Source: Salpingoeca rosetta
Taxonomy: Eukaryota; Protista; Choanoflagellata
DNA: 64,000 bases
Assembly (NCBI GenBank): GCA_033442325.1
Contig: JAWQFM010000002.1
Coordinates: 25,174 to 89,173, forward strand
Direction of reading: 5' to 3'
Shown here: positions 23,557 to 26,488 of the stretch, one piece after another
Layout: every line of letters begins with the position of its first letter
Numbering within the stretch: the stretch's first letter is position 1
The notes under the pieces: generated by a model
The model's database searches: none
Told to the model about the DNA's origin: nothing
What the model saw: the letters and a program-made list of their open reading frames with translations, nothing else
Translations under genes and position numbers: made by a program

Positions 23557-26488
23557 TCAAGTGGTGGCGTTGATGCGGCTGTTGATGGCGGTGCACCAGT
23601 CAGCCAGCGAGGTGTCAGAGCGCGCGTCCAGGCGGAAGACGAAGGTGCGGCCGGGAACGGCAACGTGCATCTCCTCGCCACCATGGGCGAGCTCAGCTGA
23701 CAGCACGCTGGAAAAGGGGATGCGTCGCTTGGACGTGCCTGAAGCGGACTTGCCGTACGCGAGGTGGCCGTCGTCATCAAGCTTGCACCAGCACGGGCGA
23801 AAGGCGGCCCTCCGTCGCCCACGCTTCCGCAACCAGCCGATCAGTGGCTCACCGGGGCACTCGCAAGCGTCCTTGTACAACGCTCTTGCTGGTACAGAGC
23901 AGCCACGAGGAGCATCTCGCCCAGTCCCTGTCTTCTTGTCTTCATCGTCGCTGCCTGTGTGTGCTGGGCGTCTTGCGTCAACATCAGCATGTGCAACTGC
24001 ACCGAGAAATCGCATGAGCAGGTTGCGTTGTGGAGCAGACGACTGGTACACAACAGCAGAAGAGATGAACCGAAGAAGAAGGTTGCGATGAGCAAGCACG
24101 TGTTGCTGCTGAAGTCGAGACTCTGACACGTGTTGCCTGGATGTGTGCTGCCTGGTCACAGCACCACCGCGAATGCGCCGCAGGTTGCGCTCCGCCTTGC
24201 GGGTGTTTGGGTGGTCTGGCCCAAGCGTGGTTGTGAAAGCGTCGAGCGCCTGCTGCGTGTAGGCGCAAGCCTGCTCCTTTTCGCCGCGCTTGTCGTGCAG
24301 CAGGCCAATGTTCGCAAGCGTCATCGCTGTGTACGGGTGCTTCTCGCCCAACGCCTCCACGTAGACCGCCCTCGCCTTCTCATAGCACTCAATCGCCTTA
24401 CCGTAGTCGCCCTTGTTCTTGTATGCGTTGCCGAGGTTGTTGTACGTCTGTGCTGTGCTCGGGTGCTTCTTGCCCAGCACCTCCACCGTGATGGCGAGCG
24501 CCTGCTCATAAAACGCAATCGCTCTGTCGTACTCGCCCTTGTTCTTGTAGGCGATGCCGAGGTTGTTGTACGTCTGTGCCGTGCTCGGGTGCTTCTCGCC
24601 CAACGCTTCCGCCGTGATGGCGAGCGCCTTCTCGTACAGCGCAATCGCTCTGTCGTACTCGCCCTTGCTGTAGTAGGCGTTGCCGAGGTTGTTGTACGTG
24701 CTCGCTGTGCTCGGGTGTTGCTCGCCCAGCGCCTCCACGAAGACGGCGAGCGCCTTCTCGAAGTGTTCAATCGCCTTGTCGTACTCGCCCTTGTTGTCGT
24801 AGGCGTTGCCGAGGTTGTTGTACGTGTTCGCTGTACTGGGGTGCTTCTCGCCCAACGCTTCCACGTAGACGGCGAGAGCCTTCTCGTAAAAGTGGATGGC
24901 TCTGTCGTACGCGCCCTTGCTGTAGTAGGCGTTGCCAAGGTTGTTGTATGTGTCGGCTGTGCTCGGGTGCTTCTCGCCCAGCGTCTCCACCGTGATGGCG
25001 AGGTCCTTCTCGTAAAACGCAATCGCTCTGTCGTAGTCGCCCTTGCTGGCGTAGGCGCTGCCGAGGTTGTTGTAGGTCTCAGCTGTGCTCGGGTGCTTCT
25101 CGCCCAGCGTCTCCACCTTGATGGCGAGCGCCTTCTCGTACAGCTCAATCGCCTTATCGTAGTCGCCCTTGCGGGCGTAGGCGTTGCCGAGGTTGTTGTA
25201 GGTCTCAGCTGTGCTCGGGTGCTTCTCGCCCAGCGTCTCCACCTTGATGGCGAGCGCCTTGTCGTAGTAGTGGATGGCTCTGTCGTACGCGCCCTTGCTG
25301 AAGTACGCGTTGCCGAGGTTGTTGTACAGCACCGCCACGTTCCCCCCTTTCTCCCCCTCGGTGCGTAGCCGAATTGCTAGGGCTGTCTCAAAGTAGGCGA
25401 TTGCCCTGTCGTGCTCGCCAAAGTCGCTCAGCACCGCCCCAACGTTGAGGCACAGCCCCGCGAAGGCGTCAGTGCTGTCCTCGCCTTGTGCCCGCATGGC
25501 TTCGACGGCGCCCACCGCCTTTTGCAGGCACCACGCGCGCAGCTGGTCCTTCACGGCTTGGTTGACTGCGCTGAAGCCACCCGCCCACAACTCGATCGCC
25601 GTGAAAATCATGTGTTTGTCATGGGGGTTAAAGGCGTCGGCTCTTTGTGCCTGAACGCGCACCAGCGTGTCTGTGACGGCTTGATAGTCACGCGCGATCG
25701 CTAGGACCAGTTCTAACTCCTCGCTGTTGGGCAGTTGGATGGTGACCTCTGTGCCTTCGTTGCTGATGCCACAGAAGATCTCCCACAAGCACCACGCGCG
25801 GGTCAAGGGAACGGGGTCTCGCCACGGCATGAGCACCAGCAGCACATGGCCAATGTTGGCAATCGACTGCTTGAACGTGGTACTCCACCTGGGTGTTGAG
25901 AAAGGGAAAGGGGGCGGATGGAGGGAAGACAAAGACAGGGAGGAAAGGGGAAGGGGTTGCAGTTTCGTGAGGGAACAGGGTGTGCGTGTCTGTGTGCGTG
26001 TGGCAGTGGTTGTTGAAGAGCGCAAGTGTCACAGACACGCATACACACACACACACACACACGCACACACACAGACACCACACAGACACACACACACACA
26101 AAACGCACCACTCTTGTGGGAGGTTGGCCGTGACGTTGGCGTTTTGGTTGTTCATAAAGAGGTCAAACCAGAAGAACACCGGCTGGGCGTCTTCCTTCCT
26201 TGCTTGCTCCTCCGCAAACTCCAGCAAGACGTTGAGCACGTCTGCGATCTTGTACCGCCATGCGTGTGACACAAAGACGGTGGCCTTGTTCACGTGCTCT
26301 GGCGACTGCTTGCGCAGCTGCTCGACGAAGGCGCAGTTGTCCTGGCGTGTGCGTGGCACAACCAGCTGCTTGCAGGCATCCTCCGTGGTCATCTCAGCGT
26401 ACGTGTCGGGGAACTCGCGCTGCAGATCACCCAGAAACCGCCGCACAGCTGCCACGGACACGCCGTGCGTCAGTCGCTGGTCAGCCAT
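23557..26488 (-). CDS. TIR/HET-like domain - ten 42-aa TPR repeats - PH domain protein (about 903 aa, 2 exons)
   Basis: Exon 1 26488-26109, exon 2 25888-23557, phase-2 GT-AG intron, open frame. N-domain VFVSHAW...FFWFDLFMNNQ...IGHVLLVLMPW...PLTRAWCLWEI. Repeats TAxTYNNLGxAYxxKGxYDxAIxxYEKALAIxVExLGEKHPS. C-terminal PH: GWLRKRG...WCKL..GHLAY...RTFVF...WCTAIN. Confidence 0.92.
24205..25464 (-). repeat. Coding tandem array of ten 126-bp TPR units
   Basis: Exact 126-nt period with no indels; the eight central units are highly similar at DNA level. Confidence 0.95.

What the first reader, a model, noticed from the sequence alone, without database searches (positions are those of the whole stretch)
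25690..26290. N-terminus of the TPR protein looks like a catalytically intact TIR/HET-like NADase
Seen: VFVSHAW, FFWFDLFMNNQ, IANIGHVLLVLMPW and PLTRAWCLWEI in the order of the TIR elements betaA (FxSH/Y), betaB (WxD), betaC and alphaC (WCxxE). The Glu codon is at 25782-25780. The SxxW / WxD..Q / RxW..E pattern also fits fungal HET domains. Established: the WCxxE glutamate is catalytic in SARM1, plant and bacterial TIR NADases. Inference: a protein likely to be labelled only as a TPR-repeat protein is an effector-sensor receptor with no NB-ARC/NACHT module, plus a C-terminal PH domain that could target it to membranes such as food vacuoles.
Basis: partly seen in the sequence, partly recalled or inferred. 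Interest (0 to 1): 0.85.

Follow-up and report, generated by a model that had tools for sequence, protein, structure and literature searches.

The report
Unannotated TIR-like enzyme domain on TPR protein
A choanoflagellate gene annotated only as a TPR-repeat protein starts with a divergent, database-invisible relative of the TIR immune-signalling enzyme domain that keeps the TIR catalytic motif, and it belongs to a very large protist family that no one has tested at the bench.

Summary
All four strings lie on the minus strand in the stated order, and the Glu codon is at 25782-25780. A 220-nt intron (26108-25889) splits the domain.

The gene is Salpingoeca rosetta XP_004987959.1, annotated 'tetratricopeptide protein'. 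Residues 1-262 match no Pfam, NCBIfam, PADLOC or PDB sequence.

Several weak lines of evidence agree on a TIR-like domain:
- TIR_2 is the only Pfam family that recurs below threshold (7 of 67 relatives).
- A profile-profile alignment to S. rosetta's own canonical TIRs (P 0.003, above all 120 shuffles) puts C160 and E163 on the TIR Cys and Glu.
- W159, C160 and E163 form the TIR alphaC WxxxE motif and are invariant in 67 of 67 relatives.

The family has about 4,800 clusters in protists, about 65 copies in this genome, and none found in prokaryotes or viruses. It is almost always fused to TPR_12 arrays and no NB-ARC or NACHT was seen.

HET membership is not supported by the Pfam model. NADase activity and an immune role are inferred, not shown. 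The scan flagged paralogues of this gene elsewhere in the same genome.

The parts
23557..26488 (-). Whole gene from ATG to stop. This is S. rosetta XP_004987959.1 / UniProt F2USI1, named 'tetratricopeptide protein'.
26109..26488 (-). Exon 1, residues 1-126 plus two bases of codon W127.
   Evidence: junction confirmed by P0001
25889..26108 (-). Intron of 220 nt (GTGCGT...CCCAG) containing (CA)n runs. It lies inside the TIR-like domain, between the BB loop and alphaB.
   Evidence: RNA depth is about 0 here and non-zero on both exons. About 58 paralogues break at the same position.
23557..25888 (-). Exon 2, running to the stop codon (23557-23559).
26306..26488 (-). N-terminal extension of mainly helices, residues 1-61. 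It is conserved with the family, including T35 and T47.
25483..26305 (-). TIR-like core, residues 62-262, interrupted by the intron. Predicted order: betaA-alphaA-betaB-BB loop-alphaB-betaC-alphaC-betaD, then a helical C-terminal half.
   Evidence: Model pLDDT 94.7, pTM 0.90; fold searches
26258..26278 (-). VFVSHAW: betaA and the start of the AA loop. W77 is invariant; S74, H75 and A76 are at least 95% conserved.
   Evidence: TIR_2 profile position 1 aligns here.
26144..26176 (-). FFWFDLFMNNQ: betaB and the BB loop. D109 is invariant; W107 and Q115 are 97% conserved.
25822..25863 (-). IANIGHVLLVLMPW: end of alphaB, betaC (residues 141-145) and the start of the CC loop.
25777..25809 (-). PLTRAWCLWEI: CC loop and alphaC, carrying the WxxxE motif. 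R157, W159, C160 and E163 are each invariant in 67 of 67 relatives.
25780..25782 (-). GAG codon of E163, the candidate catalytic glutamate.
   Evidence: hhalign places it on the Glu of canonical TIR_2 domains.
24165..25467 (-). TPR_12/TPR_10 array of 42-aa units. The annotated protein omits 84 aa of it (24619-24870).
23839..24164 (-). Linker of low complexity, open in frame, and conserved in paralogue P0002.
23572..23838 (-). C-terminal PH domain (PF00169, 27.2 bits against a cut-off of 25.1).
   Evidence: No RNA reads covered 23614-24041 in two runs.

Best explanation
Residues about 62-262 form a highly divergent member of the TIR superfamily. It is a separate family that Pfam does not cover, with a mainly helical extension of about 60 aa in front and a largely helical C-terminal half.

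The domain keeps the TIR active-site signature on helix alphaC: W159-C160-x-x-E163. I read this as the WxxxE motif plus the plant-type Cys. The other invariant residues sit on the elements that form the TIR NAD+ pocket in known enzymes: the end of betaA and the AA loop, the BB loop, alphaB and alphaC.

The most likely function is a Glu-dependent N-glycosidase acting on NAD(P)+ or a related nucleotide. It would deplete NAD+ or make an ADPR-derived or cyclic-nucleotide signal.

The domain is fused directly to a TPR_12 array with no NOD/STAND ATPase in between. I therefore infer that the TPR array, and here also the PH domain, controls activity by binding a ligand or membrane and bringing TIR-like domains together, since known TIR enzymes build their active site from two adjacent domains.

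Shown here: the sequence, the splice junction, residue conservation, the predicted fold, the family's size and its domain architecture.
Inferred: homology to TIR (about 0.8), enzyme activity (about 0.5), and a defence or conflict role (about 0.35).
For: Fold:
- AlphaFold2 model of residues 62-262 has pLDDT 94.7 and pTM 0.90. The full N-domain model has pLDDT 86.6.
- In Foldseek against PDB, the top 10 chains are all TIR domains (RPPT, RPP1, SNC1, MAL), with best E 0.011 and probability 0.97 (similar).

Sequence:
- TIR_2 is the only Pfam family matched by more than two of 67 relatives (7 members, best E 0.0026).
- In two of those members, TIR_2 profile positions 1-62 align from betaA to betaC.
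- hhalign of the family profile against 15 canonical S. rosetta TIR_2 domains scores 25.4 (P 0.0027) over 84 columns from betaA to alphaC. C160 and E163 fall on the TIR Cys and Glu. The reversed control scored 14.1, and none of 120 shuffles reached the observed score (maximum 23.2).
- W159, C160 and E163 are invariant in 67 of 67 relatives. E is also invariant in 56 of 56 full-length representatives.

Literature:
- The alphaC WxxxE motif is established: AbTir W204/E208, SARM1 W638, L6 W131. The Glu is essential and the Trp is needed for cyclisation (bioRxiv 10.1101/2022.05.07.491051).
- The conserved plant TIR Cys (L7 C132, RBA1 C83) is needed for 2',3'-cNMP synthetase activity and cell death (bioRxiv 10.1101/2021.11.09.467869).

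Architecture and family:
- 55 of 56 long family representatives carry TPR_12 and 4 carry PH. No NB-ARC or NACHT appears among the 25 families listed.
- The genome has about 65 paralogues. Of these, 25 of 65 lie within 100 kb of a scaffold end against 8.6 expected (P 3e-7). This pattern is typical of fast-turnover families.
Against: - No single similarity score is strong. No Pfam TIR model reaches its cut-off, and P0001 itself has no hit even at E 10.
- The hhalign probability is only 11%.
- I could not superpose coordinates, so the equivalence of E163 with the catalytic Glu rests on the profile alignment and on the order of secondary-structure elements.
- The C-terminal half departs from canonical TIR. 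betaE is reduced to a single bridge residue.
- A homodimer prediction gave no verdict.
- Many TIR domains are adaptors, not enzymes.
- There are no biochemical or genetic data, and RNA support for this exact copy is thin and confounded by paralogues.
Confidence: 0.55

Rival explanations
1. The domain is an enzyme of the same fold but with a different substrate or chemistry. Candidates are a 2',3'-cAMP/cGMP synthetase or nuclease acting on RNA or DNA, or a nucleoside/nucleotide N-glycosidase or transferase of the 2-deoxyribosyltransferase/MilB type, rather than an NAD+ hydrolase.
For: - The invariant Cys three residues before the Glu matches the plant TIR Cys that is needed for 2',3'-cNMP synthetase activity but not for NADase activity.
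- Several invariant residues (H75, D109, Q115, R157) have no assigned TIR role.
Against: - The WxxxE motif with an invariant Trp is the signature of NAD+-processing TIRs.
- Foldseek ranks TIRs first, not deoxyribosyltransferases.
- The only sub-threshold Pfam signal is TIR_2.
Confidence: 0.2
2. The domain is a non-catalytic, TIR-like adaptor. It would signal by homotypic assembly with the other paralogues or with canonical TIR proteins, as MyD88, MAL and TRIF do, and the conserved Glu and Trp would be structural.
For: - Adaptor TIRs (MyD88, IL-1RAcP, IL-18Rbeta, TRAM, MAL) are among the best structural matches.
- About 65 paralogues and at least 29 canonical TIR_2 matches in the genome would offer partners.
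- Dyrka et al. 2014 proposed an adaptor role for HET.
Against: - Complete invariance of W, C and E on alphaC across a family with 31% mean column identity is what is seen in enzymatic TIRs.
- Adaptor TIRs generally lack the Glu. This last point is from my own knowledge and was not tested here.
Confidence: 0.15
3. The domain is not homologous to TIR. It would be an unrelated flavodoxin-like alpha/beta domain whose WCxxE string resembles the TIR motif by convergence or chance, with an unknown function linked to TPR scaffolding.
For: - No curated model matches.
Against: - Four independent kinds of weak evidence point to the same family in the same register.
- The shuffled controls never reach the observed profile score.
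- The motif sits on the right helix after the right strand.
Confidence: 0.1

Closest known systems
Plant TIR domains (L6/L7, RPP1, SNC1, RUN1, RBA1)
   Same: These are the top Foldseek matches. They share the same strand and helix order, and alphaC carries W-C-x-x-E with the functionally defined Trp, Cys and Glu. The domain is also N-terminal, ahead of a repeat sensor.
   Different: No Pfam TIR match. There is an extra N-terminal extension of about 60 aa and a divergent, helical C-terminal half. The domain is fused directly to TPR with no NB-ARC. The family is protist-only.
SARM1 / C. elegans TIR-1
   Different: The domain order is reversed: the TIR is C-terminal in SARM1. There is no SAM oligomerisation domain, and sequence identity is only 12-14%.
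Fungal HET domain (PF06985)
   Same: The three-block pattern (SxxW, WxD..Q, RxW..E) and a size of about 200-260 aa are similar, and both sit N-terminal to repeats. HET is reported to be remotely TIR-like with a conserved Glu, with homologues in choanoflagellates including S. rosetta, stramenopiles, haptophytes and green algae (PMC4986451; PMC9153377).
   Different: The Pfam HET model is absent from the 25 families listed in the scan of 67 members at E 10 and found nothing in this genome (a search whose controls also stayed silent). HET is usually alone or joined to NACHT-WD40/TPR. The motif likeness is recalled from memory, not tested.
Bacterial TIR_2 / Thoeris ThsB
   Different: No prokaryotic or viral relative was found by pattern scan plus tblastn. 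There was no PADLOC hit.
Plant TNP (TIR-NBARC-TPR) and fungal HET-NACHT-TPR/WD40 receptors
   Same: A TIR-type N-terminal domain combined with a C-terminal TPR-type repeat sensor.
   Different: The central STAND ATPase that defines those receptors is absent here and in 56 of 56 family representatives examined.
Nucleoside 2-deoxyribosyltransferase / MilB hydrolases
   Different: These enzymes have no WxxxE motif, are stand-alone, and are ranked below the TIRs by Foldseek.

Membership tests
TIR superfamily (Pfam TIR PF01582 / TIR_2 PF13676) | A match to a curated TIR model above its cut-off | tested here: not met
   P0001:1-270 has no Pfam hit at E 10. Of 67 relatives, 7 hit TIR_2 below threshold (best E 0.0026, about 18 bits against a cut-off of 28). 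PF13676 finds 52 places in the genome, none at this gene.
TIR superfamily (Pfam TIR PF01582 / TIR_2 PF13676) | A flavodoxin-like alpha/beta fold in the order betaA-alphaA-betaB-alphaB-betaC-alphaC-betaD, closest to solved TIRs | tested here: met
TIR superfamily (Pfam TIR PF01582 / TIR_2 PF13676) | A WxxxE motif with the catalytic Glu on alphaC | tested here: met
   W159-C160-L161-W162-E163 lies in predicted helix 158-169, after strand 141-145. W, C and E are invariant in 67 of 67. hhalign puts C160 and E163 on the TIR Cys and Glu. The motif is defined.
TIR superfamily (Pfam TIR PF01582 / TIR_2 PF13676) | Self-association that builds the composite active site | tested here: inconclusive
   The homodimer prediction scored 0.01, with verdict 'no answer'.
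TIR superfamily (Pfam TIR PF01582 / TIR_2 PF13676) | Glu-dependent NAD+ cleavage | not testable with these tools
   This needs a biochemical assay.
HET domain (PF06985) | A match to the Pfam HET model | tested here: not met
   HET is not among the 25 families listed for 67 members at E 10, so at most one member could match. There were no candidates in the own genome, but that search's controls also found nothing, so its sensitivity is unproven.
HET domain (PF06985) | Induces cell death when expressed | not testable with these tools
   This property is reported for fungal HET. It needs an experiment.
NLR / STAND receptors | A central NB-ARC or NACHT NTPase between the effector and the repeats | tested here: not met
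   Only TPR families and PH are found in the protein. In 56 family representatives, no NB-ARC or NACHT appears among the 25 most frequent families.
TPR_12 / TPR_10 repeat proteins | A match to the Pfam models above their cut-offs | tested here: met
   TPR_12 scores 525 bits over 10 stretches and TPR_10 scores 401 bits.
PH domain (PF00169) | A match to the Pfam model above its cut-off | tested here: met
   27.2 bits against a cut-off of 25.1, E 5.8e-6. This is marginal, and its transcription was not confirmed.

The most novel reading that the evidence does not exclude
This would be the founding example of a eukaryote-only receptor class found across protists. In it, a HET/TIR-like nucleotide-signalling enzyme is wired directly to a TPR sensor with no NOD ATPase. 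The class would be sister to fungal HET and would bridge bacterial and plant TIR enzymes with fungal cell-death domains. In the closest living relatives of animals it would have expanded to about 65 copies enriched near scaffold ends, forming a previously unrecognised innate-immune or allorecognition repertoire that may produce a new ADPR-derived or cyclic-nucleotide signal.
Probability: 0.3. Interest if true: 0.8.

Novelty: new variant of a known kind. Interest (0 to 1): 0.6.

Why it matters
TIR enzymes drive cell death and immune signalling in bacteria, plants and animals. The related fungal HET domain still has no assigned biochemistry (a 2025 review lists it as 'ND').

This work defines a large, uncurated sister family. 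It has about 4,800 clusters at 50% identity across haptophytes, green algae, diatoms, oomycetes and choanoflagellates. It has a confident model, an invariant WxxxE site and an almost obligatory TPR fusion.

The family offers a tractable system for two questions: what HET/TIR-like domains do outside the classical lineages, and how a TIR-type effector can be controlled without a NOD module. S. rosetta can be cultured and edited, which makes it suitable. The result would also correct the annotation of thousands of 'TPR repeat proteins'.

Tried and rejected
- Pfam on each exon and on residues 1-270 gave nothing at E 10.
- Single-sequence and profile searches of PDB sequences gave only chance hits, such as ATP synthase delta at E 0.5.
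- PADLOC and NCBIfam scans of 67 members gave nothing recurrent.
- The ESM Atlas feature search restricted to named clusters found no named family.
- The Atlas fold search returned only members of the same family.
- A PF06985 (HET) search of the own genome found no candidates, but the tool's controls also found nothing, so this is uninformative.
- I could not obtain bona fide HET sequences with the tools, so no profile-profile test against HET was run.
- Pattern scans of GTDB genomes and IMG/VR found no relatives.
- The homodimer prediction gave 'no answer' and is evidence neither for nor against binding.
- hhalign in global mode gave a meaningless probability. I used local mode with shuffled controls instead.
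- RNA reads did not give a splice-junction read or copy-specific proof of expression. Many reads run on into sequence absent from the window and so probably come from paralogues.
- I considered that the 84-aa gap in the annotated protein might be an intron. I rejected this because the boundaries are not GT..AG.
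Full report
**Observation.** I read the minus strand of 25600-26560 and mapped the residues with a script. All four strings are present:

| String | Window coordinates |
|---|---|
| VFVSHAW | 26278-26258 |
| FFWFDLFMNNQ | 26176-26144 |
| IANIGHVLLVLMPW | 25863-25822 |
| PLTRAWCLWEI | 25809-25777 |

The first two strings are in exon 1 (26488-26109) and the last two are in exon 2 (25888-23557).

**Gene and organism.** A word-indexed search returned a 100% identical protein, P0001. 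This is 'tetratricopeptide protein' of Salpingoeca rosetta, XP_004987959.1 / F2USI1. Its sequence reads PQEWWSTTF across my predicted junction. No source names it, or its relatives, as anything other than a TPR protein, a PH protein, 'kinesin light chain' or hypothetical.

Pfam finds a strong TPR_12/TPR_10 array (525 and 401 bits) and a marginal C-terminal PH domain (27.2 bits against a cut-off of 25.1). It finds nothing in residues 1-270 even at E 10. There is no NB-ARC or NACHT.

**The family.**
- An exhaustive phmmer search of 1.84 billion cluster representatives with residues 1-270 found 4,786 proteins at E up to 1e-3 and 2,893 at E up to 1e-10.
- The ESM Atlas places the neighbours in Haptophyta, Chlorophyta, Bacillariophyta, Oomycota and Perkinsozoa, with no Pfam family for the domain itself.
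- Pattern scans confirmed by tblastn found no relative in 185,579 prokaryotic species genomes or in IMG/VR.
- In the S. rosetta genome, the family profile hits 66 second-exon and about 58 first-exon segments. That is about 65 paralogues, nearly all broken at the same intron position.
- 25 of 65 paralogues lie within 100 kb of a scaffold end, against 8.6 expected (binomial P 3e-7). Repeated genes can themselves break assemblies, so this enrichment may be partly an artefact.
- Of 56 long and diverse family representatives, 55 carry TPR_12 and 4 carry PH. No STAND NTPase appears among the 25 most frequent families. The fusion to TPR is therefore old and almost obligatory.

**Conservation.** In 67 relatives with 31% mean column identity, W77, D109, P152, R157, W159, C160, E163 and I221 are invariant. 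S74, H75, A76, W107, Q115, W127, F132, P148 and W149 are at least 90% conserved. E163 is also invariant in the 56 full-length representatives. Every S. rosetta paralogue returned kept the RAWCLWE string.

**Fold.** AlphaFold2 with the family alignment gave a confident model: pLDDT 86.6 for residues 1-270, and pLDDT 94.7 with pTM 0.90 for residues 62-262. The predicted elements are:

| Element | Residues |
|---|---|
| betaA | 71-74 |
| alphaA | 81-96 |
| betaB | 105-107 |
| BB loop with two short helices | after betaB |
| alphaB | 125-139 |
| betaC | 141-145 |
| alphaC | 158-169 |
| betaD | 174-178 |

The C-terminal half is mostly helical.

- In Foldseek against PDB, the ten best chains are all TIR domains (RPPT, RPP1, SNC1, MAL). 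The best E is only 0.011, at probability 0.97 (similar).

**Sequence link to TIR.** When the 67 relatives were scanned one by one against Pfam at E 10, TIR_2 was the only family hit by more than two members (7 members, best E 0.0026). In two of them, TIR_2 profile positions 1-62 align from betaA to betaC.

I built a profile of 15 canonical TIR_2 domains from S. rosetta itself. The genome has 52 PF13676 matches, 29 of them above the cut-off and none at this gene. I compared that profile with the family profile by hhalign. The score was 25.4 (P 0.0027) over 84 columns from betaA to alphaC, with C160 and E163 on the Cys and Glu of the TIR set. The controls were a reversed profile (14.1), 60 column shuffles (maximum 17.4) and 60 block shuffles (maximum 23.2). 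None reached the observed score. The hhalign probability is only 11%, so this is supportive but not decisive.

**The motif.** In known TIR enzymes the catalytic Glu sits on alphaC within a WxxxE motif.
- AbTir W204/E208, SARM1 W638 and L6 W131 are examples. E208A is inactive, and the Trp stacks on the nicotinamide mimic and is needed for cyclisation (bioRxiv 10.1101/2022.05.07.491051).
- W159-C160-L161-W162-E163 reproduces all three positions, on the predicted alphaC, and all three are invariant.
- That paper describes the TIR pocket as formed by betaA, the AA and BB loops, alphaB and alphaC. The other invariant residues of this family fall on exactly those elements. This mapping is one-dimensional, because I had no coordinates with which to check a pocket.

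**HET.** The SxxW, WxD..Q and RxW..E pattern does resemble HET as I recall it. Dyrka et al. 2014 reported that HET is remotely TIR-like. They also reported HET homologues in choanoflagellates (an S. rosetta protein is in their figure), stramenopiles, haptophytes and green algae (PMC4986451). That taxon list is much like this family's. However, the current Pfam HET model is not among the families hit by the 67 members. The genome search with it was silent, as were its controls. I could not obtain HET sequences for a profile comparison. HET membership is therefore not supported here. A sister relationship remains plausible. HET biochemistry is still listed as not determined in a 2025 review (PMC12881547).

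**Expression.** I laid two stranded RNA-seq runs on 23400-26600 at 98% identity or better.
- Reads fall on both exons in the orientation expected for a minus-strand gene. Depth is about 0 in the intron.
- No junction read passed the listing threshold.
- Depth is zero across 23614-24041, which holds most of the PH domain.
- Fixed differences (for example 26422 G>T in 12 of 12 reads) and loose ends that run on into sequence absent from the window show that near-identical paralogues contribute reads.
- Transcription of this copy, and inclusion of the PH domain, are therefore likely but unproven.

The PH region is in frame with the TPR array across about 320 nt of linker, both here and in paralogue P0002.

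**Mechanism and rivals.** The best reading (overall confidence 0.55) is a divergent TIR-superfamily N-glycosidase with an intact WxxxE site. It would act on NAD(P)+ or a related nucleotide and would be controlled by its TPR array and PH domain through induced proximity, with no NOD module.

| Rival | Confidence |
|---|---|
| Same fold, different substrate or chemistry (2',3'-cNMP synthetase, or deoxyribosyltransferase-like) | 0.2 |
| Non-catalytic adaptor | 0.15 |
| No homology to TIR; the resemblance is convergent | 0.1 |

A homodimer prediction returned no verdict. A defence or allorecognition role is suggested only by the copy number, the position near scaffold ends, and analogy with known systems.

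**Novelty.** TIR domains, and the HET-TIR link, are known. What is new is a large, eukaryote-only, Pfam-invisible clade with its own N- and C-terminal elaborations and a conserved NOD-less TPR fusion. I class it as a new variant of a known kind, with interest 0.6. First-stage notes flagged two paralogues elsewhere in this genome with the same reading.

Noticed in passing
window 24619-24870: The annotated protein (819 aa) omits 84 aa, exactly two TPR units, that are open in frame in the genome (903 aa). The boundaries are not GT..AG and sit in repeated sequence. This looks like an annotation artefact or a repeat-number difference, not an intron.
   Followed up: partly
window 23400-24165: Two RNA-seq runs gave zero reads over 23614-24041 (the PH domain). 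Reads ending at 23550/23554 and 23573 continue into sequence that is absent from the window. These probably come from paralogous transcripts that share the 3' end, or from an unrecognised isoform.
   Followed up: partly
G000, 66 loci listed: About 65 paralogues of the TIR-like domain are spread over more than 30 scaffolds. 25 of 65 lie within 100 kb of a scaffold end (8.6 expected, P 3e-7), and 17 lie within 60 kb. This may reflect subtelomeric enrichment or assembly breaks at repeated genes.
   Followed up: partly
G000, loci L001-L027: S. rosetta also has at least 29 canonical TIR_2 matches above the Pfam cut-off. They include multi-copy subfamilies (for example near-identical copies at L014, L019, L020 and L023-L026), and they are distinct from the family studied here.
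   Followed up: partly
window 26422, 26573, 26156, 26348: RNA reads and contigs differ from the window at single bases (26422 G>T in 12 of 12 reads; 26573 C>T in 14 of 16). The cause is strain variation or reads from a near-identical paralogue.
   Followed up: no
window 21461-21560, 34161-34260, 36992-37424: There are three assembly gaps (runs of N). The last one explains the low-GC bin at 36-38 kb.
   Followed up: yes
window 26043-26062, 26086-26099, 26492-26507: (AC)n/(TG)n microsatellites lie in the intron and just upstream of the ATG. The same kind of repeat ends many exon read-throughs in other S. rosetta loci.
   Followed up: no
P0051, P0053, P0056, P0083, P0119 (metagenomic and protist relatives): Some relatives carry two or three matched stretches of the TIR-like domain, or place it in the middle of proteins of 1,200-2,150 aa with TPR arrays on both sides. 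Atlas neighbours also show fusions to DUF285 and to methyltransferase domains.
   Followed up: no
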